64,000 bases of DNA from Lepidodermella squamata (Eukaryota; Animalia; Gastrotricha): assembly GCA_047495785.1 (NCBI GenBank), contig JBLDXI010000063.1:248001-312000 (forward strand). Reading direction: 5' to 3'. The translations under genes were made by a program, and so were the position numbers. Shown in pieces: positions 1-63,082 of the stretch (positions are counted from its first letter, which is position 1; every line of letters begins with the position of its first letter). Under the pieces are notes generated by a model. It saw only the letters and a list, made by a program, of their open reading frames with translations. It was not told where the DNA came from and made no database searches.

Positions 1-3000
1 CCACTGGTGGAGGAGCCTGCTTTGGCGGTTGGCTGGAAGCGCCGCGGCCGGGCAGACGCCGGCGACGGCGATGCCGAGTACCGCTGCGACGACAAATCTG
101 GCTGCGACGCGGACGCTGCGACACCAGCCGCCGACGCAGGCCTCTGCTGCTGCTGCTGCTGCTGCAACATGTACAAGTCATCACTCGTAGCCGTCATCGA
201 AGTCATCGCCATCGCATCGGAGCAGGAATCCGAGTAAGAAAACTGCGACGAGTCGATGAGGCTCGGCCGCGATTCGGCGGCTCGCAGCAGCGCGGCGGCG
301 AGTTGCGACGACCGCCCGGCCACGCCCGCCAGCCGCCGCAGCAGCGCCACGTGCCGCGCACCCGGCCGCCGCCGGTAGAACAGCACGTACGCCTGGGCCC
401 GCGCCACCTTGTCCACAGACTGTGCAACACACAAAACACAGCGTGTACGATTCAACTGATGACTCAAATCATCGATGCATGCGACTTACGATTTGCGTGC
501 AGTAGTCGTCGTCGTACTCGAACCACCGCTCGTTGCCGTCGCCGCTGCTGCTGGGCTCGTGGCGGCACAGCGCCGTGTAGTGCCCGGCCGCCGGCGAGCC
601 GTCGTGTACAATCATCGCGACCAGGTCGTACAGCGTCGACTGCCCGTCATCGTCAGCCGAGCCGTTCACGTTCATGTTCGCCGCCGCAGCCGAGTCGACT
701 TGCATCGCCGTGTCCTCCTCAGCCGCATCACCGCTGCTGCTGCTGCTGCCAGTTGTCGAAGCAGTAGCCGTAGTACTAGTCGTAGTAGTGGCTGACTCTG
801 AAGATGCATCACCACCATCCGTTGACATGAACGGCCGCAAGTCGAGCCCAGTCAACGGAAACGACACGTGCTGTTTGATTCTAGAGAAGACAAAAACAAC
901 CACACTTTAGTAGTGCACACATCTAAACCATTTCTCTCGACTGAACGACTCAACGACAGTTTTAGTGGACATCTTCCAACGTAACATTCTATTATAGTTC
1001 TTGCTTTCAAAGTTTGCCACAACCTGGTGAAAGTTTTGATTTGCTTCGAGATATCGAATCAGACCCCTTGTAAACTTGTCAACTGCGATTGCTGTTCTTC
1101 TCACGCCTTTCTCAATCACGAAAAGTCACTAATTCTCGCTGGATTTGAATAACACGAGTGTGAGAATTTCATGGAGCCGAGCCACTACATGTCGAAAAAA
1201 TTCCAGAGAACGGTCAGATTTCGACGAATTCAATCAAGTGCAGAAAACTTGGCAATTTGAACCGTTTTTCTATCAGCTACGTTGTTACTAGGTAAAACAT
1301 GCTTCTAAAATCGCTTATTGATGGGTATCCACGGTGTTGAAGACTATGACATACAAAAATAAGGGTGATGGTTCATGGAATGACTTGAGATAGAATGACC
1401 ATGATGTGTAACATGAGATACCAGAATCTAGTTTTTTTCACAAGCATATCGCAAGTCGTGGACTTACTTGGAGACGCCGGCATTCATGTCGTGGCGGAAG
1501 CGCTTCAGGTGGATGCACAGCAGCTCGGGCAGGCCGAGCAGTTCGGCGTAGCGCACGCCGTTGCGCAGCTTCTCGCACTTGTCGCAGCTGTACATGTCGT
1601 CGCCTTTCAGCTCGTCGGCGGCGAAGAACGCGGCGAGGCAGTCGGCGAGCGTCGGCTGGTTGCCACTGCCGCTGCCATTGCCATTGCCACCGCTGCTGCC
1701 GGGCGCCCACGACGGCAGCCACGATTTCAGCCACGACATCCAAGTCGACGACGACGACGAGTGAGATGCCGAGTGCGACGATGGAATGACGATGGGGTAG
1801 CGCATGCCGCTCGTGCCGTCGATCGACTGCGCCCGCCGCAGCACCTGCAAGTCGGCGTGGCCTGGGATGGGTAGGGACAGGTCTTGGAAGCGCTCGCGCG
1901 TCGTCGACACGTTGCCGCACGTCAGGCATTTCACGCACGAGCGAATCTGCCCGTCGAACAGCGCCGAGATTATCGACTCGAGGCGAGCTGGTGCAGGCGA
2001 AGACTGAGGCTGCGGCTGAAGTGGCTGAGTTGGTTTGCTGCTGCTGTTGGTGTAGCAGCGCGGCACGACGTCGGGCACATCGGCGACGAGGTCGAAGCCA
2101 TCGACGAGCATGCGGTCTTCCGAGTCCGCATCATCGTCATCATCATTGGCTTGTTCATCATCTTGTGTGGCTGATGATTTTTCGCAGCTGCTATTCGACT
2201 GTTGTTGTTGTTCGAGACGACTCGCGTTGTTGCTGTTGTTGTTGTTCGACATGGCTGGCTCGGCGAGTTCTTCGTGCAGGCGGTCGAGGAAGCAGCGCAG
2301 GAACTCCTGCGCGTCCTGCTGCGTGTGCAGGCGGAAGGCGGGGAAAGCGGCGCGGAACTGTGCTGCCAATCCGCTCGGGTCGACGACGGCGCGGTGCACG
2401 GACGAGGGCGCCCACATGTCCTCGATGAGTTGCGAGTAGCAGCGCGCCACCGACCGCGGCCGTTCCGCCAGCCGGCACGCCACCGCCACCGAGCACGTGT
2501 CGAAGTACGCCGTCAGCGGTGGGCAGTTCGACAGCGCCTGCGCACACACAAACAATTTTAGACACAACAAATCAATCTGATGATACTTAAACTAAGCACA
2601 ATTATTAGTGAGCCTGCATTAAAAAGACTGAAGCACAAATATCGCTTTCTTAAATGTCGGAAAACCTAGTCGCTATTCGCAGAATGCAATGATTGCCTTT
2701 AAACGTCCAATTGAAACATATTTTCTTCAAAATCGGTTTTTCAGCAGTAAGTCAAAAGCTTCTCACTTAATTAATCGGATACTGTGTAAAAAAAACCAAT
2801 AGAAGCGCGGTTTCCGGCATTAAATTGTATCCCACCTTAAGCAAAGCCAGATTTCAGATTATTCAAGATTCGACATTTTTAGGTAATAACAATGTGGGAA
2901 ATTGTCTGGCATTCCCACTGTTATCTCAACATTGCGTCACCAAATGTCCCGGTTCTCATTGCGCGATTGAATAGACGAAAATACCGAACATTTGTTACAT

Positions 3001-3488
3001 TTGTGGCTTACTGATTACCTGTTCCGGAGCCCAATTTCAATCATTGCAAGACTCGACTAAATAGTCAATAACCTGGGATGAAAATGCGGCTTATTCTGTG
3101 CAATGTTCTATCATCCCACTCGAGAGGGAAATGTTCAGCTCATTTGTAGCAACTCTAGAAAACCTCAGTGGCCTCGCCAATTTGTACCCAAATAAACTTG
3201 GCAAATCGTGATTGACTGTGATGCTCCCGAGTAGTAATTACGCAAGTAAGTGTATGTAGGCAGTACCTGTAGAGCAGCGTTCATGTAACAAGTGTTGCCG
3301 ATGTTGGCGAGGCCGGTGAGTCCCCGCTGTGAATCCTCATCGCCGTCGCCGCCGCCGCCGTTCGCTGCATTCGACGCCGTCACAGAGGCGGCGGCGGCGG
3401 CGCTCGTCTCGTAGCCCGACGAACACCTGTCAGTGTCATTGTCGCAGCTGCCAATCGAGTAGAAGCGATCTCGATCACCCATCAACAT
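1..3488 (-). CDS. USP20/33: Ubiquitin-specific protease of the USP20/USP33 family, 3'-partial. Exons 3488-3267, 2537-1468, 880-490, 419-<1
   Basis: Cys box GLANIGNTCYMNAALQ|ALSNCPPL, QQDAQEFLRCFLDRLHEEL, family-typical LADCLAAFFAADELKGDDMYSCDKCEKLRNG and LCIHLKRFRHD, His box HDGSPAAGHY...WFEYDD, AQAYVLFYRR. GT-AG junctions keep frame, and the frame stays open to the window edge. Confidence 0.92.
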
Positions 3489-3621
3489 TGTTGTCAGGTC
3501 AACATAGGTACTTGCTTCTTATTTGTTTCTCAATTTGATAATATTTCCTAAATTATCGAATGACAAAATTCGATTAGCGATAAGAAAGCACGCGATTGAA
3601 CCGAAACAACCTTTCGTCCTT

Positions 3622-4642: not shown

Positions 4643-7094
4643 TCACTCGAACGAGATGAGGTTGACGGTGGAGGACTTGCGGATGGCCTCGCGCAGCCGC
4701 TGCGACCACTCGAGCGCCGCCGCCTGCGAGCCGCCCCGCATCTTGTAGATGGTGCCGCGGCTCGGCTCCTGCAGCAGAAACAGGTCCGGCTTGCGCGGCT
4801 TCGTGCACGCCAGCGCCATCCACCCCGACAGCTGGATCGACTTGGCCGGCGGGCGGTTCAGCTCGAAGTTGGCCGACGACGCCAGCCACTTCTTCAGCCC
4901 GCCCGAGTAGAAGTACGTGCCCGGCCGCGTATCCGCCGCCACAACGCCGCACATCGAAGACTGATGTTCATCGCTTTTGCTCGCGCTCAGCGAATCGTTC
5001 AGCATCTGCTGCTGCTGCATCGTGTGCGTCGACGACGACGTCGAGCACGACTGCAACGGCGACGACGCCACCGCCGAGTTGCTGTTGTTGTGGTGCTGCT
5101 GGGTGTGGTTGCTGCTCGTCGAGCCGAGGCGCGAGAACAGCCGGCGGCGAGGCGCGTACAGCAGCAGCGACCCGGGCGCGTACAGCACGGCCCAGTACGG
5201 CTGCCAGCGGGCCACCGTCGGCCGGTGCCCGTTGCGCAGCAGCGTCTTCTTCAGCAGCGGACCCTCCGCGATGATCTCCTCCGGCGCCAAAATCGACACG
5301 CCGCCCACGGCCGTCTCCAGGCCCGACTCGCCGCCCGTCGACCGGCTGCCCGTGCGGTCGATCTGCGCCGGCGAGTGCGCCGCCACCGCCACGCCCGTTA
5401 GGTTCGACGAGTTCTGCGACGGCGACGACGCGTGCGACGAAGCGGCGTGGCTCGAGTCGGAGCGCGACGACTCGGACGCCGACCGCGACACGCGCAGCTC
5501 ACCTGCCGACGGCTGCTGATGCGGCTGGTCCATGCCGTCGCTCTTCGACGACGCCGGCGTATCGGCTGAACCGATGCACGACGAGAACAGCGCCGACTTC
5601 TTGCTCGTGGTCGTCGCCGAACCGGCCGAACTCGCCGCCCGCGAGTACGCCAGCACCTTCGCGTCCGAATGCACGCGGCACGTATGGTTCGGCGGGCCGA
5701 GCTCGTCGTCGAGCATCTTCCCGCCCAGCGACATGTTCTTCTTGTGCCGCTGGTGGCCTTTCGATATTGTCATGGCGAGTTTCGAGTCGGCCGGATGGTG
5801 CTTCTCCACCACCATCATCATCGACGAGTTGTTGTTGTTGTTGACGGCGGCCGCCGAGTTGCAGCCGATCGGGCACGACGCCGACGAGGAAGAACGGCGC
5901 ACCGAGTGGCACGACGCGCTGCTGTCGTTCAACTGCTGAGTAGTTGCAGATATCACCGGGTCGACGACAGCAGGCGACGGCTCGACTACGAGTGTCGGCG
6001 AGCCGCCGTTTATCGAGGTTGAAGTATTATTGTGGTTATTGTTGTTGTTACTACTACTAGTGTCATGGTCAGGCGGCTCGAGGCGCAGCGACATTTTGTA
6101 ATAGTCGTCTTCGACGAACTTTTGCAGTTCTTCGATGAAACGGTTCGACAGCAAGTACTCGCATATGTGCTCGCTCGGCTGCAGGTGGTCGTACGTCGAG
6201 CGTTGAAACTCGGCGATCACCCGCAGTATGTTATTCATCTTCAGCTTGCGGTCGTGCGATTCGAGTCCGCCCGAATGCGGATGAGCCACGTCAATAAAAA
6301 CTATGGAAAAAAATTGTGTTTAAACCATTCATTTCATCCTTCTAATATCAATCCACTTACCAATATCAGTTAGATATAAACCTAAATAGGGTAGGCAAGG
6401 AAGGCGGACTGCTTCGAGGAAGCGGCGCAAATTGCCGTAATTGTCGTCCTCTGACACGAGCTTAGCCAGCTCGTCGAGGCGATCGCGATCACGCCGCGGC
6501 ACTAGCTGCCACGTCTGTTGCAGGCGGAAGATCGGTGTGGCCTGAAGCGCCGATACCACGGCCTTCAGTGAGTGTAGATTCTTCAGTTCGTAAAGCCGCC
6601 TCGCGACTTTTACGAAATGTGTCAACACTTCGGCGCGTGTTCGCACCTTCTGCGCTGATAGCACCTCACGTTGAACCCAGAACGAGGTTTGATTGAAACG
6701 ACGAATCATTGCAACAACATTTGGCGATAACTCAGTTCGACGCTGGCCCGTCCAGCCGCATGAAGATAACTCTTCCGGCTGGATAGCTTTAAAAGCTGCC
6801 AGGTCTAATATTGTCAGTTGAAACTATAAAGATTAACGAAACATTTAAGCTATTTAGTGAAAAAAGAATAAATGACTCAACAAACCGCATATTGCTCGGG
6901 AGGAACTTTAAGAAAATCAAAGAGTACGGCGTCAAACGCACGTAGCTCGCTGCCTTGATCATCATTGTTCAGCCGATTACCACCAGCTGTTGATGGCAGG
7001 GCTGAAAAGTGGCCCGTGTAGTCGACGGCCTATTACAACAAAATAACAAGGTAAGAATTCATCATCAAAAGCAGAGAATATATAAGCTTACCAT
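4643..7094 (-). CDS. RALGPS1/2: Ral GEF with PH domain (RalGPS). Exons 7094-7092 (ATG only), 7029-6886, 6823-6361, 6300-4643
   Basis: [17 protein letters not shown]|[27 protein letters not shown]25 domain [15 protein letters not shown]...[34 protein letters not shown]-terminal PH domain [25 protein letters not shown], end NLISFE. No REM domain, as expected for RalGPS. Confidence 0.92.
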
Positions 7095-7762: not shown

Positions 7763-9432
7763 ATGTCAAAACGCGAAGTTCGTGGTAATCTGCCCGGGCT
7801 GGTTGCTCGGGTAAGTTGCCCGCCACAATTTTTTCTCGTTTTCTAATCTACGATTTTATAACAGATTGCTCCACGGACGAGATCAGTGCCAGTCGATAAT
7901 TTGATTTTGATAAACCGAGCCGCCAATGAGCTTCGTCAACAGGCAGAATACGAAAATAGACAGAGGGCCTTGAATGATATTAGAAATAATTGGCGAGCAA
8001 CAACCGACAGGATGGTCACAAACACTCGCATCAAGGACATGGTCGCTAAACAGGAAGCTGCGTATGATCTGTCAGTTGAGCAGCGAAGAGACATGTTGCG
8101 CTGCCTACTTCAGGATGAGCAAGATAGTTACCTTGCGGAACTTGCTAGCATGCAAGAAACTGTCGAAGAACGTAAAATGAAGTTGCGCGAACGAGCTCAT
8201 AGCTTAAAGGTGCGGAAAGAAGCGGAACGTCAAGAAGAAGCACGCCGCTTGTATGAACAGCAGTTTAATGATCAATGCGAAGAGTTACGCAGCTACTTGT
8301 CTCAAAAGCAGCGCCGACAGCTCGGCGGTGATCATTTAGAGCAGATTGCATCCAAGCAATTGATCACTGACCGTGAGCGGGCGCTAGCTGCGATACTCGA
8401 CCCTCTCATTTCCGGCGACATGATCGCTAAACCCGGACGAGATGAGTCAGACGCTGCGAAAAAGCACGAGCTTGAATGTGAGGCTGTTCAAGTTCTGATG
8501 CATCAGATGAAAGCGACAGAGGCTCAGCGAGAACGAGATAAGGCTCAAATGGCTGAGGATGCTGCTCGTCTTGAGTCAGAGCGCAAATTGCTTGCTGCCG
8601 AAAATGCGGCCATGTACACTGCCCACAAGCAAAAGCAGGCAAATTTCAGCACTCAGTTGAAAAATCAGATGCGGGAACGATTGAGGCGCGCGTGGTTCGA
8701 GCAAGAGCAAGAGCTAGCAGCTGAATTGGCGGAAACAGAAGCTGCCATGGCTTCGAATGTTGCAGAACTGGAGGGTTCGTCGAACCGGAAGCGCTCGCTT
8801 ATGGCTGAGTTGCAGCGTTATCGTGCCCATCTGCAGGCAGAGAAAGAAGAACGAGCGCGTGAACAGGCCGAAATCGAGCGACAGCTCGCGCAAGACAGCG
8901 AGGAGCAGTGGCGAAAGCGATGCGAAGTGTGGAAACGCGACCGCGAGGCCAGGAAAGCCCTATTACAGCGAGTTGTTCGCGAAAGAGCGGTAAGCTAATT
9001 GAAATCCAGGGACATTATTATTTGAACTTTATGAAAATTTAGGAGCAAATCGCTGCGAAAGAAGCGGAAAGAGCGAACCGTAAGTTGGGCCGTGTCGAAG
9101 AACGCGCTCAAACCGAACGGTTGTTGGCCGAACTCAAGGAGAGCGAGTACGCTGCGGCGCTGAGAAATCGTCAGCAAAAGGACCGGTACGCGGCAGAGCT
9201 GCTTGGTCAAATGGACTTCAACGGCCGGTTGCGATACATGGAAGAGGCGGAGCGGCTTCGCGAACGCCTTGCCGGCGAAGAGGCAGCTAAAGAATATGCG
9301 CTGAAGCTGGAAGCCGCATTGGCGTCAGCTGATGCCATCGGATCAAAGACTGGAATCTATCAGGACCATCCTTTCCGTGCCCTTCAAAACCAAAACAGGC
9401 TGCCAACAAGCCTTACTCAAATCCTTTCCTAA
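7763..9432 (+). CDS. CFAP53: Cilia/flagella-associated coiled-coil protein CFAP53 (CCDC11, TPH-domain type). Exons 7763-7810, 7865-8989, 9043-9432
   Basis: N-terminal REVRG, QETVEERKMKLRERAHSLK, QQFNDQCEELR, W...EREARKALLQRVVRERA|EQI, C-terminal HPFR. Two short in-frame GT-AG introns. Confidence 0.8.
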
Positions 9433-12334: not shown

Positions 12335-15300
12335 CTATCTCTTCGACGGCTGCTGCGACGACGAGTTGGCTGACGTGGGTGCGCCCGACCACTCGGTTGA
12401 CTCGAAGTTGCGCATCAACTCGTGCTGACTCGTCAAGTCGACCGAATTCGCCAGCTGAACACACACACACAAAATCAGCCATTATTCAAATATGCGTCAG
12501 TTTTCGACAATCTCGAAAATCGATCAATCGAGAGAACTCTTCCTAGTGCCATTTCGGCGACTTCTAACTTATTAGCTATAATATTACGAGACCAAGCGTC
12601 TAGCGATTTCGGACTTATCTTCATCTTCACACTGTCATTTCAAAATGGCTTTGAAGAAAAAGATATTAGGACCGAAGTCGCCAGAAGGGCGGCATATCCT
12701 TTATCCCAGGCTATCCTATGATTTATCCTATGATGTTAATTTTCAATTTTTCGATTTTGCCACTCCCAAGTGATGGATGATGACCCTACTACCTACTAAT
12801 GCATACAATGCATAATGCAAGTGACTTACAGCTAGCCGTTGCCGCCGTTCTTGTTCCTTGAGCTTTTCGCGATTCGTCTCCGCACTCGTCGCTGGTTTGC
12901 TGCCGGTGCTAGAAGCAGGCGGCTGTGCAGCGGCTGCCGCGTTGCCGAACGACGACGACGAGCCGGAGCCGGACGACGACTCGTCGACGTGCGACGACGG
13001 CATGAGCGCGGCTGGCAGGCCGACGCGCGGCGGCCCACTCGAAGACTTACTATTATCGGCTGTGGTGGCGCTCGTCTTCAACCGCTCGCGCTCCTCCTTC
13101 TCGGCCGCCTGTTTGCGGAACAGCTCGAACGAGTCGGCGCCTCCGCCGCTGCCGCCCGTCAGTTGCGGCGGCAAGCCAGCCGTCGCCTGCTGCAGCGACG
13201 TCGGCACGCGAGACGCGGCGCCCGAGGACGCACCACCACCAACCGACGACGACGGCGCCGTCCAGCCGAGACCGGGCGACGGGCCTGCAATCAATCAATC
13301 AATCGGGTTGAGAATCAATCACGCTCGTCACACGCTACTACTACAACAACAACTCACCTGCTAGCTTCTTGTTCGAGCCACCGGCGGCGCCGCTGTCCGC
13401 CGACGTCAGCGGTGTCGCGGGCGGTTTCGGCCGCGATGCATTCAAACTCGCCGATTTGCTGCTCGGATCAGTCGACGAGGGGGCTGTGCGACAAATAACA
13501 AAACAAGATTAGATTTTATTCAGCTTTGATCACACTACGCAAGGGAAGTTGCAAACTAAAAAATGACTTAGCAAAGAATGAAAAGTGCCAGCCATCTACA
13601 TGTTTTTTGCGTGAAATTGAATTACACGAATTTCGACCCGAATTTGACGACATTACACGATTCCTCTCAATGAGACTTGACTTTGTAAAGAACGCAGAGG
13701 TTCCACTTTACGCCAAATCTATTGCAAGATTTTCAGTCAAGGTTAAGGGCTGTAAAGTAGTAGTAGACTAGTTTAGAATTATTTGAAAATTGCAGTGATG
13801 ATTCATTATTGAGAGGAATTGTTTGATGTCGAAATTCGTAAAATTCAATCTCATACAAAATATTTAGTAAATAACTGCAGCTGCTAGCACTTTTCACTAG
13901 TCCATCGACGAAACGACACTCAATATCGCACGTTTCTTCTGAAGCAATGCAATGGCAGTGAAAATAAACTAGCAAAGATTGACTGACTGACTGACTGACT
14001 AACCTGAGGTGGGAGGTCGAGGCGCCGGCGGACCAGGCGGTTTTTTCGCCGCCGCCGCCGACGAAGACGAGGAGGGGGCCGAGGGGAGGGGCGGCTTTTT
14101 CGCACTCGTTGCTGCGGATGCCGCCGCGGCTGTGGTGGTCTTCTTGCGGTTCTTGTTTTTGTTCGACGAGGAGACGGAGCCTTCGTCGTCCGAGTCCGAG
14201 TCGGACGACGACGACGAAGTCGACGAGTCGGAGGAGGACGACTCCGAGAGGCGCTTCGCCGCCGGCGCCCGCACGGCACCCAGTTTGCCGCCGGGTTTCA
14301 CGCCGGCAGCCGGCGCCGGTTTGCTGCCACTACTACTACTAGTCGCAGCGGCGGGTGTGTCTGAAGTCGAGGAGGGGTTGTTGTTGTTGGGTTTAGTCGA
14401 TGTCGAGGTGGGGCCGGAGGAGGACGAGGTGGCAGCAGGAGGTGGCTGGGTGGCGGCTTTGTTCGCCTGTTGCTGCGGCTGGCGCTTCGCCGTGCCGGCG
14501 AGCACCGAGTGGACGAAGCGCTCGAGCTCGCGCAGCGTCTTGGGCCGCAGGGCCTCGAAGTCGATCTCGATCTCGTCGTTGCCGCCCGACTCCTTGCCGC
14601 TGGAGAACTGCGGCTCGTGCTGCGCCAGGATGTCGACGACGTGCGCCAGGTTCTCCGGCGGCAACCGGTTGATGTCCTGCGACAGCTGCCGCTTCTCGTC
14701 GTACGACATCGGCCGCACGCCCGCGTCCGGTTCCACGAGGGCGCCCGACTCGTCGAGTTGCGACCCGCCGTCCGCGTCCCCGCCTGCTCCACCCGCTGCT
14801 GAGCTGGCGGTCTTCCAGCCGGGCAACTGGCCGGACGAGGACGACGCAGCCGCCGACGCCGCTGCCGACGGCCGGCCTGGCTTGCGCGGCGCCGTCGCCG
14901 GACTCTTCGGCCCGGCTGCTCCGCCGCGGCCTTTGCCCGCCCCTTGCGCCGCCTGCTGGTCCTTCGGCTCGCGTTTCTTGCGCGGCTTCTTCGGCGGCGA
15001 CACGCCGTCGGCGGACGCGCCCGAGCCGGCCGTGGCGCCCACTCCGGCGCCGGCGATGGGCGTCGACAGCACGACCGGCGTCGACTTCTCGGCGTTCATG
15101 TTGCAGATCTGCTGCTGCAGCATGATGATCTGTTGTTGCAGCATCGCGAACGCGCTCGACTCGCCGCTCGGCGTCACCAACGGCGTCTGCGGCATGGCGG
15201 CCGGCTGCGGCGTGTCCGCCGCCGCTCCGCCGCCCCGCTGGCTCTTCGGCAGCTTGCCCGATTTCGACGGCGACACCGACACGCGCGCCTTCTTGTTGTT

Positions 15301-18300
15301 CGGCCCGCTCGTCTGCTCGTCGTCGCCGCCGCCTTTCTTCGACGCGGCGCCGCTCGACTCAGCTTTCGCGTGTTTCCGCGGCGTCGCTCCATCGCCGCCG
15401 TCCTTTGCCTTGTCGAGGGCTGACTTTTTCGATGGCTCGAATGAACCTGCAATAGCATAAAAAGTTAGTAAACACCAGTATAGGCTAGAATCTATCAAAT
15501 CAAAAGCTCATTTTTCCTGAAAAGTGCACACTAATTTCCGTGGAATCCGAGATTGTCAAAAAATCCCAAATTTTACGATTTCTACGATAAAAAATCCAAA
15601 TAAAGAGCCATCAAATTGTGATTCTAAGGACAGGACACAGCACCATCCTGATTTGAAATATATCAAAAATGAGGGTTTATTTCCTATTTGGTTTCAAAAT
15701 CTGGTTCTTCTGCACCTAATTTCGGACTCGACAGTGGTCAAAACAAGCAATTTTGAGTCCACTCGCATTTATTTGGGCCTGGCCAAATTGAACAATTGGA
15801 AATCTAACCTGCACGACAGAATAGCTTCAATAGCGAAGAGCCTAAAACCCTCAAAATTTAACAATCGTTCGATAGATACAGATTTTCAAGGTCAAATTCC
15901 AGACAGGACCACAGGTTTCCATTATCTCGAAATTTTAACCCTAGTTAAATTGATCCCGGCTATCATCAAAAAAATTAAGAACTGTGGTGAATTCGATTCG
16001 ATTACCTAGTACCACATATTTTAGGAAATGTAATGTGCAATGGGGCAAATTTATTGCCGGTCAATTCAATACACAAAGATTTATGAACTGACCTGATCGG
16101 CGTTTCTGGTTGGCAGCAGTTGTCGAAGCTGGGGCGGCTACTGCTGCGGCTGACGGTTGAGCGTTGTTGTTCGCATTGACGGTGATACTGGACGAGCGGC
16201 CTTCCTCGGCCTCGTCCTCGAGCATCTGCACGAGCAGGAGTGCGACCTGCGTCTCGAAGACGGCCTGCAGGCGGTGGCCGAAGTCGGCGATGATGTGGCC
16301 GGGCGGGTTGTAGCGGTAGCAGTTCGTGAACATGAGCCGCACGTCGTAGACGAAGTCGTGCGCCGACGCGTACCGCCCGTGCTCCAGCTTGCGCTTGATC
16401 GTCGACAGGTCCATGGGCCGCCGCACCACCTTCGGGTACTCGGGCTCGAGGCTCGTGTCCACCGGCCGGTAGAACACGGCCGCGTAGTCGCGGTGCGCCG
16501 CGTCGAACAGCTCCTCGAGCACCTGCGAACACAACTCGACGCGCTTCGTCGCCTGCGCGTCCGACAGCGCCGCCGCGGCTGCTGCGCCGGCCGCCGTCGA
16601 CGACGACGAGCCGGGCCGTGAGACGAGGGTCGAGGTGCGGCGCTTCTTGCGGGCCGACGCGAACAACGACGGTCTGTTAGCCGCAGCCGCGAGCGCTGAA
16701 GACTTGGCCGCAGCAGAAGACGACAACAGCGAAGTTTGCGAAGACGATGCAGCGGCGGCGGTCGTCGACTCGAAGGCCGACTCGCTGGCGCCGTCGTCGC
16801 CCGTCACCACGCGGTGCACCGTCGGCTTCGACTCGCCGCCGATGGACGCGGCCGGCGACACCGGCTCCTTGACGTGCACCTGCGGCTGCGGCGTCGACCC
16901 CCGCGACTCTTCCGCCACCGCCGCCGCGACGATTGCGGCAGCCGGCGATCGAGGGTGCACGGACGACGACGCTACGGACAACACCGAGGCCGGCGTGAGA
17001 GCCGACTTCGGCTCGGCCTTGCGGGACGCCGATTTCGGCTCGCCGTGGCTGTGGTGGTGGTGGCTGGAACTGCCGCTCTTGCTGCTGCCGCCGCCGCCGC
17101 CGGTGCCAGAGCCACCAGAGCCACCGGACTCGACTTCTTCCGACGGCATGTCACGCAATTTGCGCTCGAAAATCTCCTGCAACTGCATGCCCATTTTCGC
17201 CACGTCCTGAAACAGCATAATCACACGCGCGTTAAGCACAGCAATTTCAACTTTTTGTTCCTAATAATGACTACTAGACTAATGCTGAAACTGCAGCAGC
17301 AGCAATATGGGTACAGCCTCACACTTGAGCAACTCGACAGGTGAACAAATAAATGGCTCCTTTGCGTGCACCCAACTACTACCCGTTCCTATTTCAGCAA
17401 TAGCTGCAGCGACCGTAAAATCACATTCACTTTCACCTGAGATTTCAATCACAATAGCGAATAAGAATTCAAATCAGCCATGGTCAGCTAGTCGAGAAAC
17501 CATAATTACCCTATTACCTACAAAATCCCGATTATGGCGTTCTAGAAGAACTGCTATAAAAATAAGGTCGGAGAAAAACGGCCCAGAAAGGTGTTAAGAA
17601 ATACAGAAAGCGCACTCTGATAACTGATTTGTAAACCAAACGTAACTAAGATTTTTGGCAAATTTTCCTTCAAATGTAAAATCCTAGCATAATATAGAAA
17701 GTCTAGCGAGCAAATCATACCCTATACATAGAGCTCGTCGACATGGAAAAAAATAACTAGGATCTGAATGAATGAGCAAAGAATGGGCTAAATAGTTCTA
17801 CGATAATTGCTGCTGCTGATGCAATTTTAATATGAATCACCACCATTTTTCCATTCGAGTAACCTCAATTGCAGTAAAACAAAAATGACGATAACAAGAG
17901 CGACGCGGAAAAGTAATAAAAAACCTATAAAATTACCACCCTAGCTGGTGAATCAATGAGAATTAACAATGAAGAGCAGCAGTAAGAACTCACGTCATTC
18001 GGAGGGTTGAATAGAAAACAATTTGAGAACATGAGGCGTAGATCGGCAATGCACTCCTCCGCCGAATAATAAAAGTTGTTCGACAGCCGTTTCCGAATCG
18101 TCCCTAGATCCATCGGCTCTTTTATCAACTCGTAGTACGTCGGCAGTTCGAGCAGCACCGCGTCGACTGGTTTCTGGAATGGCCACGACTGTTTGTTCGC
18201 CCACAGCGACTTGTTGACGACTTTCTTCAAAAACTCAAGCTGGTTCGTCTGCCGCGTCTTCTTGCCCGCTGGGGCGGAGACAGCAGGCGGGTCTCGAATG

Positions 18301-18898
18301 GCGATCTTCAACTTCTCACCAGGCATTTTCTTCGAATCGGTCACTACTTTGTAGTAAAGACCTGTGTCGTCAGCCTGGCCTTCTTGCTGGCCTCCCGAGT
18401 TAGAAATCGGCTGATCGCCAGTATTGCCACCGTCATTACTCGCCGTCGTGCCTTCATTCATCATCGCCGCTGTGGCTGAATTCGACACGGAGGCGGGTGC
18501 TTTCGGCGAGCCGCCACTCGTCGACTCCTCCATGCCACCGACGGATGACGCCGCATCGTTTATCACATCATTGCTATTCGTGTTTGTGTTCACGTTTTCG
18601 ACCAAACTACTACTTTGCTGAAGCGGTTGCTGCTGCTGAGACGAATCATCGTTGCCATTGGTAACCAACTGGCCGTTTTTAGCCTTATCGGACGAATGAT
18701 CCTATAAACAGATCAACAAACGCGGCATGAATCTAGCGATTCTGTGCCAACAATTCAAAGGTGACTCACGTCAGAGCCGGCAGATGTCAGATTTTTAGCA
18801 AAACTGCCACTGCAACGATCGCTTGTGTCTTCATCAGATTCGGGCGCCATGTTCAGGCCTTCTCTGTGAAGTGTCATGCCCGTAGCAACAGCACTCAT
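12335..18898 (-). CDS. BRD2/3/4: BET family protein, long BRD4/fs(1)h-L-like form. Exons 18898-18770, 18701-17994, 17206-16093, 15446-14004, 13483-13358, 13284-12830, 12454-12335
   Basis: BD1 ([41 protein letters not shown]), BD2 ([21 protein letters not shown]), ET domain ([39 protein letters not shown]), SEED tract, [16 protein letters not shown], and C-terminal motif EQERRQRLA|[18 protein letters not shown]. All junctions are GT-AG and in frame. Confidence 0.93.
13579..13896. mobile_element. Decayed MITE-like inverted repeat in a BET intron
   Basis: ttttgcgtgaaattgaattacacgaatttcgac (about 13604-13636) matches the reverse complement of 13828-13860 with a few mismatches. Outer tgaaaagtgc / gcacttttca also pair. 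Confidence 0.5.
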
Positions 18899-19969
18899 TA
18901 GCGGAATTCAAGCGATTTACCATGCAAAATATGATGGGAAGTAATACACATAACAAAAACTAGAAAATCAATAGGAGCATAATGTAATCATTATCCCAGG
19001 CACAGTAACGTGGACATCAACATGTTCTTCGTCTGCAACATGTGCCAATACGTTTCCTCCAGCTGAAACGAGTCGTAAACAATTACGATAAAGTCAAGCC
19101 TAAATGTTGCCAGATAAATTATCCTCCGCATCTTCTCCTCGATGCAGCCCTCGAACATCAATCCATACACAATTCAGTCGCTCAACGGTAACGTTTAACG
19201 GAAGAAATCCAGTAGTTTCGAATAATCGCGAAGCATGCATCACGTAAATAGTAAAATCAAGTTGCTCCTTGGTCGCAAATCGCGAACAGATGATCTTCAT
19301 TGACGATAGGACGATGGATAATGCCCGAATTAAATTATAAACCTGAATCGCCGAGAAACCACTCTGCGCGTCGTCTCACAGTTCTTCACAGAATGAACGA
19401 TACAGCAATCATACTGAACGGTGCAGTTCTGGGTGTATTCAACTCCGGTTCAAAACTGACAAAACTCCGGTTAACATAGAAGTTCGGTCGAACTAAATGG
19501 ATCGATTGATGGATTTCGTAAATGGTAGGTCTATATTGATCTAAATCTCAATAAAAACCAGCCGTCAATTCGCGCTAAACCACACTGCGATGGATTTAGC
19601 TAGCCGAGAACCTAAAAACCGTTTGCAGGTTAATTTCTTCATTTACGCCAACTTCTGGACGAGTTATCAACCTAAAAGAAAGGAACAATTTATGGTCCAA
19701 AGACGCACACGACGGCAGGGAAGAAATTTACGATAAAACAAACAAAAATCAGGCAACAGAGCCAGCAAATTGACACCATTCACCAGTAAATTTCGTTTTT
19801 TCTTTCCAAGTTGTTGATAAGTGACGGCGGAGACGACTCATCCGCCGCCGCCAGTTGAAAATTTCCATGCTATCCTTCACATTAATATATTTTAAAATTA
19901 ATTAATTTTGTTATAAAAATTAGTTATAGTGAAAACAAAAAATAAAAAAATATGGCCGCAGTTTTTATT

Positions 19970-43192: not shown

Positions 43193-44593
43193 GAGAATAT
43201 GAGAATAGCCTATAACAAATTGGAGGGTAATCAAACGTATAGGAGAGGCATGTCGTTCAATCTTCAGTCAGGATCAGATGACGAGGCAGGGAGAGTCGGG
43301 GATCTTTGCAGAACTGACTTCTGTTTCCAGAATCAGTTGGCCAGTCAGCTGGTTTAAAGTTCGTCAACTCGTTCCATCCTGTAACCTATAACCATCCGAC
43401 TTCGACTTTCCTTGCCCGCCCGACTGCTATGCCCGCCCTGCCTGCCTGCCCTCATAACTAGGGAACCTCAGGATCCCTAGAAAGCAAATTAGATCATTGG
43501 GCAGAGGAAAGCCCTATTGTCAAAGGTAATTTGCCAATCCTCAGACAGTAGTTTGAATGGCTGTGCTAACTATTTTCTCCAGACGTTTGAAGAAAATTAA
43601 GGTATTTTTTACAATTCTATTGTCAGCACTAAGCAGCCTTGCAGGGTCGTGGCCAGCAACAGATAAACAGTCGTAAGAAATATGGTAGGCTAACTGGCTC
43701 AGAGGAGTAACGTTACCACAGAACATACATGTAACATCATCAATTCTGAAAATAAAATGTTCGATACGGCGAAAGACGGTGTTCGTGACGACTCGCAGAG
43801 CAGTATTTCTAAGGTCAGGTGGATAATTTTCGAATATCTTACTAATGCCAAAGTAACCGTCCCTGGCTAATAGGTAGCTGGCATTATATTTATTATGAAA
43901 TTTGACAGATAGTTCAGAAACATAGCAGTCTTTGACTAGGTTGAAAAATTGCTCCATGACTGCCGGGTCACGCATAAACCAGAAGTCGGGAGGCAGATTG
44001 TAGGATAATAGAAATTTACGAGTTGCGTGGATGGGATTTAAGACACCCATCTTCGGACGAGAATGGAAGTAAAAAGAAAAAGCATCATTCACTAAGGGGT
44101 TGGCACATTTCGTCAGCTCACATGTAAACTTGACTGCATTGAGTTTCGCCTTTAGGCTAGGGGGAATAAGTCCCATAACAAAACCAGTTGATAAACTAGA
44201 CGCATTGTACGGAATGTCGCGCGCTCTTTTATAATACTTATAACAGACGCTGTCCAATTTAGCAACACGGCTAGGGGCGAAGAGGCCCCAGAGTTCGGAG
44301 CCTGCAAGCATCGCCGCTTCAATTTTGCTACAAAATAGTGTATCCAAGTTATTGCGTTCTATCATACTCAATTTGATCCTATGAGAGGAAAGAGCGTTGT
44401 AACAGCTATTGCCACGTGTAAGCGCATTTTCAATAGCTTCAAACCAGCTCAAGTCGCTGGATATCGGTACGCCTAGGTAGAAATCAGATTTTACAACTTT
44501 GAGAGGTACGCCGTTCATATTAATGCTATGCCCGCCCTGGCAGCTGCGATGAGTCAAACGTTTCCCGCCAACAAACTTAACGTTTTTTAACAA
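43193..44593 (-). mobile_element. 5'-truncated non-LTR retrotransposon (LINE): RT C-terminus/thumb and CCHC region (ORF 43541-44593) plus a structured 3' UTR
   Basis: NGVPLKVVKSDFYLGVPISSDLSW, LFCSKIEAAMLAGSELWG, CMFCG...HISYDC. The 350-codon frame is uninterrupted, and the element appears to end in a short TATTCTC repeat near 43193-43208. Confidence 0.85.
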
Positions 44594-45533: not shown

Positions 45534-46118
45534 ATGTCAGCAGCTGACGTGTTACCACCAGCAGCGATTAGCAACGGCGAAGAAGCTGCTTCTAGCGATC
45601 ACGCTGACGAAGAAAGCGACGCGAGAGAGGCTGAGGCGGAACGCAGTGCCGAGGAAGCATCGCACCAGCCTCTCGCCGCTCGCCTCGAATGGGCGGAGAA
45701 AAACTACCGCAACCGACTAGACACTGACATAGACGCACTTCACAAAACAGCTTTCTTAGCTGCTCACGTCGGCCGCTACCCCCTCAATCGGCTGTTGTGT
45801 TTGGCAGCGTGCTACGCGAATAGCGTCGTTCTTGGATGCCGTTACCCGGCTGGCGTGATGGCGGAACTGCAACGCGTCGAGGAAGACACAATCAACGGTG
45901 GTTTTTTGGAGCCTGAAATGGGCCGTGTACTTACTTGATTGCTTTACGTACTACATTTAGCTGTCGAAGCGCTGTTGAACAACAAGGAGAAGCCGCAGCA
46001 GCATCTGCGCGGTCGGCGGCGAGCCCGACGGAGAAACAACGACGCGGACGAAGACGGCGACGAGGCAATGGCCGACGGCAATGACGACGAGGCAGCAGCT
46101 GCTTCTGAATCTACATAG
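45534..46118 (+). CDS. XRN2-binding domain (XTBD) protein, PAXT-1/CDKN2AIPNL-like. Exons 45534-45897, 45961-46118
   Basis: FLAAHVGRYPLNRLLCLAACYANSVVLGCRYPAGVM matches the XTBD pattern (..LL.L...AN...LGCxY). 63-nt phase-1 intron, AATAAA at about 46222. Confidence 0.75.
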
Positions 46119-47860: not shown

Positions 47861-49420
47861 TCACCGTTGTTGTATTTGCTTGGCGTTGGCCTTGACGAAG
47901 TTCTGGAACACGGCGGATTGCAAGAAGCGCTGGTAGGAGTCCCGCTCCATGAGCGCGCGGATGCGGCGCTGCGCTTGCGCGAACGTGTCGCGGCCCGGCG
48001 CCGACATGAGCTGCGCGCACTGGATGCGCGTGCCCGCGTCCAAGTTGATCTCTTTCGGCGCCAGCTCGGTGACAAAGTTCTCGAAGATCTCGCGCGCCAT
48101 GTCCTCGACCTGCGAGTCGGGCAGCGCGCGATAATTCTCGCAGGCGATCCAAAATTCTATGTTCTCCTCACTGAACTCGGAGCGCAGAAACTGCCGGAAC
48201 AGGTCTAGACCCACTGTTCATTGTTGCACGAAAACAAACAGAAAAAACAAAACAAAGTTTAGAATATCGTATGAGCGTATTATCGCCGTGTAAAGTAGTA
48301 AGAGTTTTGTCTAGACATTAGTCAACCAATATAGGTCCTATCGAGCTGTCTCTATCAGAAAATCTAAATGCTCAAGACTTGATATTATGCAATGTTTGTT
48401 ATCCCTCATCAAGGCCGCTTTGGCAACAAATGAGCAATTGGGAATTGGACTGGATTCTATGCCACCGATATTTAGCGGACATTGCAGCCGCACTTGAAAT
48501 TTTCACACAATTTTGTTTTCTAAAATTCGACGTTGGAACATGTGAAAACGCAAGCGAGCGAGCTGCTGAAAGTGAGCCGATGAGCGTCATCGAGTGCAAT
48601 GCATCGCTATAAATTAAGCAGCCATAAATTGCGATATCGGATTCAAATAGAGTGATGCGGCTTTTTACATCGCCATCACCGCCATCACCGCCACACAGGG
48701 TCACATTTCACGCTCATCGCAACGCGAAATGCGTCCGGGACTAAAAGCCACCACGGAGAACAATAATTCTGTTGCTGTGGTCTTTCAGATGATACTATAT
48801 GCTTCGGGGACTGATGGCAGCTGATGAACGCAATCTGCTTGGAATAACTGTCGTCGCTTTGGATCCCCTATACCCCTTAATCCGAGCTAATAATATTCCT
48901 AAGAAGATTTGCGAGGTCTAAGGCCAGCACATGGCTGCTGTCCGCGATGTCCAATGTTTTGGATAAAGAAACTTGACGAGTATTAATAGATGATGATAAC
49001 TTGCCTTTGTGCGAAAGAACGGCGTCGAAGGTTTGCATCCACGAGTCGACAGTCGCTTGCGTGACGGCGGCGATGTCGGCCGGCGTGACCGGGGCGCCGA
49101 CGAGCCGCGACTGCGCCTGCGCCGCCGACGCATCGCCGCCAGCAGCGCCGGCCGCTCCGGAGGCGCCGAGTGACGCGGCGGACGGGTGTGCGGAACCGAG
49201 CGCGGCCTGGCCGCCAGGCGCCGCCGCTGGTTTCTTGGTGAAGATGCCCTTCAAATCCTGTCCGCTGTTTGTACGTATACAATGGTTAACTTGAGATGAC
49301 AAATGATAATGATGATGACTTACATGGACTTTATTTTGTTGGACGAGGACATTTGTCGGCTGGCAGCGGCTTCATTGAACTGCGCCTGAACGGGCGGCAA
49401 AGTAAGACATCGTAGTATTG

Positions 49421-61100: not shown

Positions 61101-62104
61101 ATGGTTATGGAGTTGTAAAAAAAATATAATGTGAGACAAGAAATTATTGGCGGTACTTTATGCTTGGCAGGGTTACACTGATCCTGCAGTTGCACCCATG
61201 CAACTGCAACTACATAAACTGAACCTAATGAGTACAGAAGCGAAAAATGCGCGCAAAAAAAACGAAACGAGAATGACTGCTGCTGATGCTGGCGTGTTTG
61301 TTCATCGGTTTTAAAACAAACAAATAACAGAAGCAGCAGCAGCAGCAACAATAAATCGAAGCCTACTGCGATAAAAGAAACTGCGCATCGTCAGAGTAGC
61401 ATGCGAACAAAAGAAGCTGCCTTTCCGCCCCGGCTCGTTTATTTACTCTGCCGATCAGAATTTACTTAATTTACAATCATGTGATGTGATGAAACAGCTA
61501 AGCCATGCGCAGCCGTTGGCGATTGACGATCGTCGATTGACGGCGAACAGCTCGACTTCCGACTCGATAAATTAGCTCAATCGCCACTTCTCACTTCTCC
61601 TGCTTCTGTAATTATTAGCTATATTCTCCAGTTTCTCATATTATGCCAACTCCTCACACAATTATTAGGTATTCTTTTTTTATTTAATAAAAACGAAAAA
61701 GTTCAATGTGTTTCAGTATTAGTTGTTATCAATGTTTTTCTTTTCAATAGTATTCAGACAATAATACATACATACATACACTTCTAATTCGACAACCATC
61801 TTCTTCTCGGTTATTATTATTATTATTAACATTACGTACTCGATCGATCAAACAACAGTTAAGGGGCTATCCTATGTCTGTACTTCACGTGGACACTGGT
61901 TGGCATGGCCACTATGGCTAAACACACAAACACACAAAGTGTAGTAGTAGTAGCAGTTGTAATAAGAACGCGGCTTTAACGAGCGTAAATGCTCCCATGT
62001 ATTTTCAAAATTTGACAAAAAAAGAAGAAGCAGATTTAGTTTCACAGCGACTTAGTAGTAGTAGTAGTATTCACCAGTATCACACACGCTATCCTAAACG
62101 TCTC

Positions 62105-63082
62105 TTATTCCGCTCCATCCTCGTCGTCGTCCACGTCGCCGCCGTCTTCTTCGTCGAGCTGAAAAATGACATCAGATACGAAACATTAGTCGTCATCAAT
62201 AAATGAACACGCCAACATGAAAATGATTCCAATCAAGGATCAGATAGGAAAGTAATCACAGAGATTCATTAGATTGACAGACTATCACTATATCATCATT
62301 CGAAAATAGCCAAATGACAATGAAAATGAAAACAGTGACTTACGCCTTCGCCGTCTTCTCCCTCATCGCCTTCATCAGGCGACTCGTCACCCTCGTCGAG
62401 CTCGGGGGCCAAGAAGTATTGCAGAGGGTTCGCCCAGATCTCGTCCTTGATCAACTCGCCGATCTCGTCCGCCGTCGCGTCTTCGTTCGAGCACGTGAAC
62501 CAGAAGAAAAACGAGTCCGAAAGACCGGCGCGCTTCTTGCCAGACGCCGCCTTCTTCATCGGGTCCTTGCCCTCCTTCCACTTGATGCCCGTCGACTTGC
62601 ATTGTGGCTCGCACAGGTGGAATTCCTTTGTCAGCACTGCATTTTCGAAGTACGGATTGGCGTCGAAGTGGAAGCTGATTTTGTAGCCTGACTTGATGTC
62701 TTCGAATTCCTGCACTTCGAGTTTTGTCAAATGTTGCAAAATCTGCTCGTCTTCCTCGGTGATAATCGAAGAGATCTGAGGGTGGTTGATCAGCGCCGTC
62801 AGCCAGAAGCGAGGAATCTTCGAGATGTGATCGTGACGCTTGTGATAGAACGGTTGCCGCAATTTGTTATATTTCTGTTCGACTTTCAGGATTTCCTCTG
62901 ACGCTTGTTCGTTCAATTTTTCAATTTCGTTTTGAACTTCGTCGATCTTCTCAACGGAATCTTGGAAATCCCGCGCGTTAAAAGACCCTACGTAGACAAA
63001 TAAGTACATTGAATAAGCAGGAACTCCTTTGAAAAATAGGAAACTAACCATCGGTCTTGGCTACCTTAGCCGGACTCGCCAT
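62105..63082 (-). CDS. SET: SET/TAF-I (NAP family histone chaperone, I2PP2A). Exons 63082-63049, 62987-62344, 62158-62105
   Basis: [83 protein letters not shown], acidic tail. Confidence 0.95.

What the first reader, a model, noticed from the sequence alone, without database searches (positions are those of the whole stretch)
1..63082. A proto-MHC-type gene block wrapped around a stray Hox gene
Seen: USP20/33, RalGPS, BET, PRPF38B, PSMB7, R4-type RGS and SET lie within 63 kb. Established: human homologues map to the MHC paralogons. These are USP20, SET, BRD3, PSMB7, RALGPS1 and RGS3 on 9q32-34; USP33, BRDT, PRPF38B, RALGPS2 and the R4 RGS cluster on chromosome 1; BRD2 in the MHC itself; and BRD4 on 19p13. 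Inference: the window is a compact remnant of the ancestral proto-MHC linkage group in a spiralian, now mixed with material from the Hox linkage group.
Basis: partly seen in the sequence, partly recalled or inferred. Interest (0 to 1): 0.75.

Follow-up and report, generated by a model that had tools for sequence, protein, structure and literature searches.

The report
Leftover ancient gene neighbourhood around a Hox gene
A small invertebrate (probably a gastrotrich) keeps nine genes side by side whose human counterparts sit in the MHC's sister regions, with a lone Hox gene among them; this is a real but ordinary remnant of an ancient chromosome, not a new kind of gene cluster.

Summary
All seven named genes are in the window: USP20/33, RalGPS, a BET bromodomain gene, PRPF38B, PSMB7, an R4-like RGS and SET. 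So is a central-class Hox gene of Lox4/Ubx type. Two more genes of the same human regions, EDF1 and COP1, lie just right of the window.

Fifteen genes of the roughly 110-kb gene island can be placed in the human genome:
- Nine map to the MHC paralogon (9q32-34, 1q23-25, 1p, 6p21, 19p13). The binomial P is 7e-9 to 8e-4 for background fractions of 0.05 to 0.20.
- Three map to the Hox paralogon: the Hox gene, SNF8 and a type-I diacylglycerol kinase.

The Hox genes of this genome are dispersed over three contigs. Each of those contigs also carries MHC-linkage markers. This fits a lineage-specific fusion and mixing of two ancestral linkage groups.

A second, unidentified species (metagenome contigs) shares only two sub-blocks: BET-CFAP53-RalGPS-USP20/33 and SNF8-PRPF38B-Hox. 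Its PSMB7 lies elsewhere, so the whole block is not under obvious constraint.

The eleven other linkage-group markers I could place lie on nine other contigs. The scan had already noted a similar 53-kb block elsewhere in this genome (s1-374236). This is a new example of a known kind of conserved synteny, of moderate interest.

The parts
1..3518 (-). USP20/33-type deubiquitinase. It has a long UCH domain with an insert. The gene continues left of the window into a DUSP exon at C63:246041-246793.
   Evidence: Pfam UCH hits on three exons and DUSP in L010. The best named relatives are USP20 or USP20/33 with zf-UBP+UCH+2xDUSP. No zf-UBP was detected here.
4643..7029 (-). RalGPS: a RasGEF domain followed by a long C-terminal part with a PH-like end.
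   Evidence: RasGEF hits. 136 bits to human RalGPS1 against 73 for the next GEF. Exon limits come from tblastn against the relative.
7862..9432 (+). CFAP53 (CCDC11), a ciliary coiled-coil protein. Its human gene does not lie in the MHC paralogon.
   Evidence: PDB phmmer: 130 bits to a TPH-domain protein (PDB 8snb) and 57 bits to a chain named CFAP53.
12746..18907 (-). BET-family gene with two bromodomains, an ET domain and a C-terminal tail.
   Evidence: Pfam Bromodomain x2 and BET. The tail and 5' exon were matched in the relative.
22272..23659 (+). Thr-rich, mucin-like secreted protein with no homologue found.
   Evidence: Translation; no Pfam hit.
23821..27219 (-). Astacin metalloprotease with ShK domains. 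It cannot be placed in a linkage group.
   Evidence: Pfam Astacin and ShK.
28341..29241 (-). Ankyrin-repeat gene fragments.
   Evidence: Weak Pfam Ank_4 hit and ankyrin motifs seen in the translations.
32422..33195 (+). SNF8/VPS22 (ESCRT-II), a single exon. The human gene lies beside HOXB at 17q21.32.
   Evidence: Pfam EAP30, 6e-47. Hits are named SNF8.
33673..37039 (+). PRPF38B-like splicing factor: a PRP38 domain in several exons and an RS/RD-rich tail.
   Evidence: PRP38 hits, exon translations and an intronless 476-aa counterpart in the relative.
37561..39088 (-). Central-class Hox gene of Lox4/Ubx-abdA type. Exon 1 is 39088-38213, the intron is 38212-38029, and exon 2 is 38028-37561.
   Evidence: Homeodomain hits. 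The sequence and splice sites were read directly. The orthologue in the relative has YPWM and the same intron position.
41230..42156 (-). PSMB7 (proteasome beta-2), main exon. The first exon was not located.
   Evidence: Pfam Proteasome + Pr_beta_C. Hits are named beta type-7 at 56-62% identity.
43541..44593 (-). ORF that looks like the C-terminal part of a non-LTR retrotransposon reverse transcriptase. This reading is by eye.
   Evidence: Translation; no Pfam hit.
45534..45938 (+). Gene with an XTBD domain (CDKN2AIP/CDKN2AIPNL type). Its human counterparts do not lie in the MHC paralogon.
   Evidence: Pfam XTBD, 3e-13.
47861..48214 (-). RGS-domain exon, closest to the R4 subfamily.
   Evidence: Pfam RGS, 8e-33. 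PDB ranking: RGS2/5/1/18/8/4 come first.
62296..63051 (-). SET (TAF-I/I2PP2A) histone chaperone, main exon.
   Evidence: Pfam NAP. 260 bits to human SET.

Best explanation
The window is a passively retained piece of the bilaterian ancestral linkage group that became the vertebrate MHC paralogon (human 1q23-25/1p, 6p21.3, 9q32-34, 19p13). It sits in a compact, fast-evolving genome, most likely that of the gastrotrich Lepidodermella squamata.

In this lineage that linkage group has been joined and mixed with the Hox-bearing linkage group (ALG B2 / chordate group B), and the Hox cluster has been broken up. A lone Lox4-type Hox gene with its old neighbour SNF8 therefore now lies between PRPF38B and PSMB7.

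The genes have no common function. They are neighbours because rearrangement has not yet separated them. Two tight sub-blocks are old enough to be shared with a second species: BET-CFAP53-RalGPS-USP20/33 and SNF8-PRPF38B-Hox.

Shown: gene identities, the enrichment, the dispersal of the Hox genes, and the shared sub-blocks. Inferred: the assignment to linkage groups, the fusion with mixing, and the neutrality of the linkage.
For: - Gene identities.
- The right flank adds EDF1 (human 9q34.3) and COP1 (human 1q25). The left flank adds a type-I DGK, whose human genes lie at 12q13, 7p21 and 3q27.
- Nine of 15 placeable genes fall in the MHC paralogon: P = 7e-9 to 8e-4 for p0 = 0.05 to 0.20.
- The amphioxus proto-MHC is one whole chromosome, with core human blocks 1q23.3-25.3, 6p21.33-21.31, 9q33.2-34.3 and 19p13.2-13.11 (PMC13012124).
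- The Hox cluster belongs to ALG B2 / CLG B (PMC11789643; PMC7269912).
- The other Hox-like homeodomains lie on C9 and at two sites on C21.
- On C21, lunapark lies 11 kb and PBX 54 kb from a Hox-like gene, and CSNK2B is on the same contig. SURF4 is on C9.
- The sub-blocks recur, in the same order and orientation, on independent metagenome contigs at 40-80% protein identity.
Against: - Linkage-group membership rests on human map positions from memory plus one paper's block limits, not on orthology mapping to amphioxus or scallop.
- The assembly is contig-level, so a fusion cannot be told apart from translocations.
- The eleven other markers I could place lie on nine other contigs: C1, C9, C10, C18, C20, C21, C24, C28 and the small C68, which holds a second VPS52 copy. 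These could be one huge chromosome or a scattered linkage group.
- Three placeable genes (CFAP53, the XTBD gene, the HSPA12-like gene) belong to neither paralogon.
- The RGS subfamily call is weak.
Confidence: 0.75

Rival explanations
1. Plain chromosome-wide macrosynteny. The whole chromosome still corresponds to the MHC-type linkage group (plus B2), so any window on it would look like this and nothing about this block is compact or special.
For: In amphioxus such genes are spread over a whole chromosome. An earlier scan note reports a second, similar 53-kb block elsewhere in this genome. PBX/CSNK2B on C21 and GTF2H4/SEC16 on C20 also sit together.
Against: The eleven other markers lie on nine contigs. 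The coordinates seen on eight of them already add up to more than 23 Mb of a 121-Mb genome. One chromosome holding all of them would be very large. The related species has already lost most of the adjacencies.
Confidence: 0.3
2. Selectively maintained cluster. The genes would be held together by shared regulation, for example Hox enhancers lodged in bystander genes. Alternatively they would form a functional ubiquitin-proteasome/chromatin neighbourhood, as has been argued for the placozoan proto-MHC.
For: Three ubiquitin-system genes (USP20/33, PSMB7, COP1) and three chromatin or transcription genes (BET, SET, EDF1) lie within 100 kb. SNF8-PRPF38B-Hox and BET-CFAP53-RalGPS-USP keep their order and orientation in a species with only 40-80% protein identity.
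Against: In that species PSMB7 lies between GDT1 and P450 genes, BET is followed by Maelstrom and a P5-ATPase, and USP by Ank/SRCR genes. The block as a whole is therefore not kept. Unrelated lineage-specific genes (mucin-like, astacin, a retroelement fragment) are interspersed. No expression data were available.
Confidence: 0.15
3. Chance clustering, or selective matching by the reader among many human paralogue positions.
For: PRPF38B, USP33 and BRDT lie on 1p, outside the narrow core blocks.
Against: Eight of the nine genes have an orthologue or ohnologue inside the narrow core blocks defined independently in PMC13012124. Even at a liberal background of 0.20 the binomial P is 8e-4.
Confidence: 0.03
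4. Assembly artefact. The published assembly was made from amplified DNA, which can give chimeric contigs that join unrelated segments.
For: The gene island is only about 110 kb and lies between two long tandem arrays in a 431-kb contig. The Lepidodermella assembly used multiple displacement amplification.
Against: A chimera would break synteny rather than create it. The adjacencies BET-CFAP53-RalGPS-USP and SNF8-PRPF38B-Hox are reproduced in independent metagenome assemblies of another species.
Confidence: 0.03

Closest known systems
MHC paralogon / 'proto-MHC' linkage group (human 1q23-25, 6p21.3, 9q33-34, 19p13; a single chromosome in amphioxus)
   Same: The gene content matches: BET (BRD2/3/4/T), PSMB7, RALGPS1/2, USP20/33, SET, EDF1, COP1, R4 RGS genes and PRPF38B all have human counterparts there. 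As noted in older work, the 9q33-34 set is the best represented.
   Different: No class I/II, TAP, PSMB8/9, complement or tenascin genes are present, and only BET has a counterpart in the MHC proper. Nine genes lie within about 100 kb, whereas in amphioxus they are scattered along a chromosome (PMC13012124). The block is also interleaved with Hox-paralogon genes.
Bilaterian ancestral linkage groups and 'fusion with mixing' (Simakov and colleagues; bryozoan case PMC11789643)
   Same: Genes of two ancestral groups, the MHC-type group and Hox-bearing B2, are interleaved on the same contigs (C63, C21, C9).
   Different: This is not shown at chromosome scale. The known shared lophotrochozoan fusions, as I recall them, do not include B2 with this group, so the event would be lineage-specific.
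Atomised or dispersed Hox clusters (Oikopleura, flatworms, bryozoans)
   Same: The Hox-like genes lie on three contigs, and the two on C21 are 1 Mb apart. The published Lepidodermella set is reduced to four or five genes (PMC11660948).
   Different: Each dispersed Hox gene still sits near old Hox-group neighbours (SNF8 here; lunapark on C21). The Lox4 gene has an intron inside its homeodomain (between residues 14 and 15) that is shared with a second species.
Placozoan 'proto-MHC' scaffold (Suurvali et al. 2014; cited from memory, not read here)
   Same: It is a compact invertebrate region holding MHC-paralogon genes, with ubiquitin and proteasome members.
   Different: It is a different phylum, and I could not compare gene lists. 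No stress or immunity theme is evident here.

Membership tests
MHC-paralogon (proto-MHC) linkage block | Several unrelated genes whose vertebrate orthologues or ohnologues lie in 1q23-25/1p, 6p21.3, 9q32-34 or 19p13 | tested here: met
   Nine genes fit: USP20/33, RalGPS, BET, PRPF38B, PSMB7, RGS-R4, SET, EDF1 and COP1. Human positions come from established knowledge; the block limits come from PMC13012124.
MHC-paralogon (proto-MHC) linkage block | Enrichment over the genome background | tested here: met
   Nine of 15 placeable genes give a binomial P of 7e-9 to 8e-4 for assumed backgrounds of 0.05-0.20. The background fraction was assumed, not measured.
MHC-paralogon (proto-MHC) linkage block | Orthologues lie on one chromosome in amphioxus, scallop or annelid (formal linkage-group assignment) | not testable with these tools
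   No annotated amphioxus, scallop or annelid genomes or linkage-group tables were on hand.
MHC-paralogon (proto-MHC) linkage block | Classical anchor genes present (BRD2, PBX2, NOTCH4, RXRB, CSNK2B and others) | tested here: inconclusive
   Only BET is in the block. PBX and CSNK2B are on C21. There was no hit for the Notch NOD, BAT2_N, ABL F-actin-binding or hamartin families anywhere in the genome.
Hox gene, central class (Lox4 / Ubx-abdA type) | Antp-class homeodomain preceded by a hexapeptide | tested here: met
   There is a 60-residue homeodomain (69 bits) with MYAWM upstream. The orthologue in the relative has YPWM.
Hox gene, central class (Lox4 / Ubx-abdA type) | Ubx/abd-A/Lox2/Lox4 signature after helix 3 (MKLKKE followed by a UbdA-like peptide), and phylogenetic placement | tested here: inconclusive
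   MKLKKE and a loosely UbdA-like stretch are conserved in both species. No tree was built. A Lox4 is reported for L. squamata (PMC11660948).
Hox gene, central class (Lox4 / Ubx-abdA type) | Location in a Hox cluster | tested here: not met
   No other homeobox match was listed on C63. The nearest relatives are on C9 and C21.
USP20/USP33 | N-terminal zf-UBP finger | tested here: not met
   No zf-UBP hit on C63. Several of the closest relatives also lack it.
USP20/USP33 | Long UCH domain with an insert, followed by C-terminal DUSP domain(s); closest relatives named USP20/33 | tested here: met
RalGPS | RasGEF domain closest to RalGPS, with no REM domain, and a C-terminal PH domain | tested here: met
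   136 bits to RalGPS1 against 73 for the next GEF. The PH-like C-terminus was seen by eye only, with no Pfam hit.
BET family | Two bromodomains followed by an ET domain | tested here: met
PRPF38B | A PRP38 domain distinct from the PRPF38A copy, with a long RS tail | tested here: met
   The genome has two PRP38 loci: C41 scores 200 bits (canonical) and this one scores 84 + 42 bits. The RS/RD tail is at 36341-37039. Its closeness to human PRPF38B is from memory only.
PSMB7 (beta-2) | Proteasome beta fold plus the Pr_beta_C tail; named orthologues | tested here: met
R4 subfamily of RGS proteins | RGS domain closest to RGS1/2/4/5/8/16/18 | tested here: inconclusive
   The top eleven structures are R4 members (97-89 bits), but RGS17 of the RZ subfamily scores 89. 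No tree was built.
SET | NAP fold closest to SET rather than to NAP1L | tested here: met
   260 bits to human SET, 195 to plant NRP, 57 to NAP1L1.

The most novel reading that the evidence does not exclude
The joining and mixing of the Hox-bearing linkage group (B2) with the MHC-type linkage group is a shared derived character of gastrotrichs, or of gastrotrichs plus flatworms, and could serve as a rare genomic change for placing these phyla. In addition, the two deeply conserved micro-blocks (SNF8-PRPF38B-Lox4 and BET-CFAP53-RalGPS-USP20/33) are held together by regulatory constraint rather than by inertia.
Probability: 0.2. Interest if true: 0.55.

Novelty: new member of a known kind. Interest (0 to 1): 0.35.

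Why it matters
The finding shows that a small, fast-evolving genome of a poorly studied phylum still carries recognisable pieces of bilaterian ancestral chromosomes. It gives concrete markers for asking whether two of those chromosomes fused in this lineage: the Hox/lunapark/PBX group on C21, this island on C63, and the two micro-blocks shared with a second species.

I found no synteny analysis in the published gastrotrich genome paper. A chromosome-scale assembly could turn these markers into characters for the debated position of gastrotrichs. The finding says nothing about immunity.

Tried and rejected
- An exact look-up of the SNF8 protein for official gene models found nothing on record.
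- Solved structures could not tell USP20/33 from other USPs, because no catalytic-domain structure of that pair exists. The DUSP exon found none.
- The protein atlas gave only a weak 'UBP20' lead. I settled the USP identity with the HMMER representative search plus source names and domain scans.
- WDR5 and TRAF2, both 9q34 genes, were considered for the WD40 and RING ORFs in the right flank. Both were rejected: the two ORFs form one COP1 gene.
- CFAP45 (1q23) was considered for the coiled-coil gene and rejected in favour of CFAP53.
- The Notch NOD, BAT2_N, ABL F-actin-binding and hamartin families gave no hit in the genome, so they could not serve as markers.
C63:1-148000 and 412001-430751, and the surroundings of the markers on other contigs, were therefore not read.
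- A search with the 174-bp satellite found only 64-68% relatives on C56, C11 and C68, and did not link C63 to C21 or C9.
- A scan of JGI metagenomes for COP1 found no close relative.

Full report
**Where the window lies**

The window is G000:C63:248001-312000 of a 121.2-Mb assembly in 151 contigs. An earlier scan note suggested a gastrotrich. The published Lepidodermella squamata assembly has 122 Mb in 157 contigs and four Hox genes (Hox2, Hox3, Lox4, Post2). That paper has no occurrence of the words 'synteny' or 'linkage group' (PMC11660948). The identification is an inference from these numbers.

C63 is only 430,751 bp long. The part I could read (148-412 kb) has three sections:
- On the left, about 64 kb of a tandem array whose 3.56-kb unit carries 19 tRNA genes.
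- In the middle, a gene island at roughly 212-322 kb.
- On the right, at least 90 kb of a 174-bp satellite.

**The observation**

All searches were made exon by exon, by reference.

- **USP.** Three minus-strand exons carry a UCH domain stretched by a large insert. A DUSP domain follows just left of the window. A full HMMER search gave best hits that are named USP20, USP20-like or USP20/33 wherever a name exists. Most of these hits have the architecture zf-UBP + UCH + 2 DUSP. The zf-UBP finger itself is not detectable here, and several of the closest hits also lack it.
- **RalGPS.** The RasGEF exon scores 136 bits to human RalGPS1 against 73 for the next exchange factor.
- **BET.** The gene has two bromodomains and an ET domain.
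- **PRPF38B.** The PRP38 gene is the weaker-scoring of only two in the genome and ends in an RS/RD tail. This fits PRPF38B.
- **PSMB7.** It has the beta-2-specific tail domain and beta type-7 named relatives.
- **RGS.** The domain ranks R4 members first, but by a small margin.
- **SET.** The match to human SET is unambiguous.
- **Hox.** The gene starts at 39088. It has an MYAWM hexapeptide and a 60-residue Antp-class homeodomain ending in MKLKKE. A 184-nt GT-AG intron lies between homeodomain residues 14 and 15.

**What else is in the island**

Within the window:
- CFAP53
- a mucin-like gene
- an astacin/ShK protease
- ankyrin-repeat fragments
- SNF8
- a retroelement-like ORF
- an XTBD-domain gene

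To the left lie a type-I diacylglycerol kinase (DAG_kinase_N + C1) and an HSPA12-like gene, the latter read by eye. To the right lie EDF1 (MBF1 + HTH), COP1 (RING and WD40 exons; 271 bits to human COP1) and a C-type lectin.

**Is the clustering more than chance?**

Human map positions below are from established knowledge, not from a tool.

| Group | Genes and human positions |
|---|---|
| MHC paralogon (9 genes) | USP20 9q34.11 / USP33 1p31; RALGPS1 9q33.3 / RALGPS2 1q25.2; BRD2 6p21.3 / BRD3 9q34.2 / BRD4 19p13.1 / BRDT 1p22; PRPF38B 1p13.3; PSMB7 9q33.3; RGS3 9q32 and the R4 RGS genes at 1q23-31; SET 9q34.11; EDF1 9q34.3; COP1 1q25 |
| Hox paralogon (3 genes) | HOX clusters; SNF8 17q21.32; DGKA 12q13 / DGKB 7p21 / DGKG 3q27 |
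| Neither (3 genes) | CFAP53 18q21; CDKN2AIP 4q35 / CDKN2AIPNL 5q31; HSPA12A 10q25 / HSPA12B 20p13 |

So nine of fifteen placeable genes fall in the MHC paralogon. Eight of the nine fall inside the narrow core blocks that an independent paper gives: 1q23.3-25.3, 6p21.33-21.31, 9q33.2-34.3 and 19p13.2-13.11 (PMC13012124). The binomial tail for 9 of 15 is 7e-9 at a background of 0.05, 3e-6 at 0.10 and 8e-4 at 0.20.

**The Hox side**

The homeodomains most like this one lie at C9:3.74 Mb, C21:1.24 Mb and C21:2.24 Mb. The Hox genes are therefore dispersed.

- Lunapark is a classical Hox neighbour. It lies 11 kb from the Hox-like gene at C21:1.239 Mb.
- PBX lies 54 kb from that same gene.
- CSNK2B is also on C21.
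- SURF4 is on C9.

All three contigs with Hox-like genes thus also carry MHC-group markers. The Hox cluster belongs to linkage group B2 in other spiralians (PMC11789643) and to chordate group B (PMC7269912). The simplest reading is a lineage-specific joining and mixing of the two groups.

**Genome-wide markers**

Other single-family markers of 6p21 and 9q34 lie as follows:

| Marker | Location |
|---|---|
| VPS52 | C10, with a second equally scoring copy on C68 |
| WDR46 | C18 |
| CAMSAP | C28 |
| torsin | C1 |
| SURF1 | C24 |
| GTF2H4 and SEC16 | C20, 3 kb apart |

The group is therefore spread over many contigs, with small tight pairs. Without chromosome scaffolds I cannot say whether these contigs belong to one chromosome.

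**A second species**

The closest relative of the USP exon sits on ENA metagenome contigs of up to 30 kb. There the order is BET, then CFAP53 on the opposite strand, then RalGPS, then USP20/33 with its DUSP. Order and orientation are the same as in the window, at 40-77% protein identity.

The closest SNF8 (72% identity) lies on contigs with SNF8, then PRPF38B (intronless there), then the Hox gene on the opposite strand, again as in the window. That Hox gene has YPWM, MKLKKE and a roughly 47-nt intron at the same homeodomain position.

The rest is not shared. That species' PSMB7 lies between GDT1 and P450 genes. Its BET gene is preceded by Maelstrom and a P5-ATPase. Its USP gene is followed by ankyrin/SRCR genes. 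Two micro-blocks are old, and the nine-gene block as a whole is not conserved.

**Reading**

The block is a real remnant of ancestral linkage, mixed with Hox-group genes, and it is decaying. I found no support for a functional cluster beyond the two micro-blocks. An assembly chimera cannot create such enrichment, and the key adjacencies are reproduced independently.

'Proto-MHC' should be read as a linkage-group label only. In amphioxus the corresponding unit is a whole chromosome with 432 such genes scattered along it. The wider 'immune supercomplex' version of the idea has been called an artefact (PMC8302630).

**Novelty**

Conserved MHC-paralogon synteny in invertebrates and bilaterian linkage groups are well described. 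A gastrotrich example, with Hox dispersal and apparent B2 mixing, is new only as a case. The scan had already recorded another compact block of this kind elsewhere in the same genome (s1-374236), which I did not check.

Noticed in passing
L001-L007 (C63:148001 to about 212000), left of the window: A tandem array of a 3558-bp unit that carries 19 tRNA genes for 18 amino acids (serine twice), with no Met or Tyr among the ARAGORN calls: 54 tRNA genes in 10 kb. Earlier scan notes describe the same family of arrays, with 20 tRNAs per unit, at many places in this genome.
   Followed up: partly
L012-L020 (C63: about 324000 to 412000+), right of the window: A 174-bp satellite with 94% matches between copies, running for at least 90 kb. 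Diverged relatives (64-68% identity) lie on C56, near the start of C11, and on C68. C68 also holds a second copy of VPS52.
   Followed up: partly
G000:C21:1238937-1293335: A Hox-like gene, lunapark (11 kb away) and PBX (54 kb away) lie together. This is a second place where Hox-group and MHC-group genes are neighbours.
   Followed up: partly
G000:C20:2567114-2571507: GTF2H4 (human 6p21.33) and SEC16 (human 9q34.3/1q25.2) are adjacent, 3 kb apart. An Antp-like homeobox lies 58 kb away at C20:2509447.
   Followed up: no
window 38029-38212; L032:4990-5036: The Lox4-type Hox gene has an intron inside the homeodomain, between residues 14 and 15: 184 nt here and about 47 nt in the related species. 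The other Hox-like genes of this genome also have introns inside the homeodomain.
   Followed up: partly
window 33673-37039 versus L032:3010-4440: PRPF38B is split by introns here, one of about 1.4 kb, but is a single 476-codon ORF in the related species.
   Followed up: no
window 43541-44593 (-): A 350-codon ORF that looks like the C-terminal part of a non-LTR retrotransposon reverse transcriptase. It has no Pfam hit and lies between PSMB7 and the XTBD gene.
   Followed up: no
window 3488-4643: No zf-UBP exon could be found between the RalGPS stop and the first UCH exon of the USP gene, so this USP20/33 orthologue seems to have lost its N-terminal zinc finger. Its closest relatives P0001 and P0005 also lack one.
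   Followed up: partly
G000:C54 (about 0.4-0.64 Mb and 2.15-2.19 Mb): There are dozens of weak homeobox hits in tight tandem arrays. These are the lineage-specific homeobox expansions already noted by the scan.
   Followed up: no
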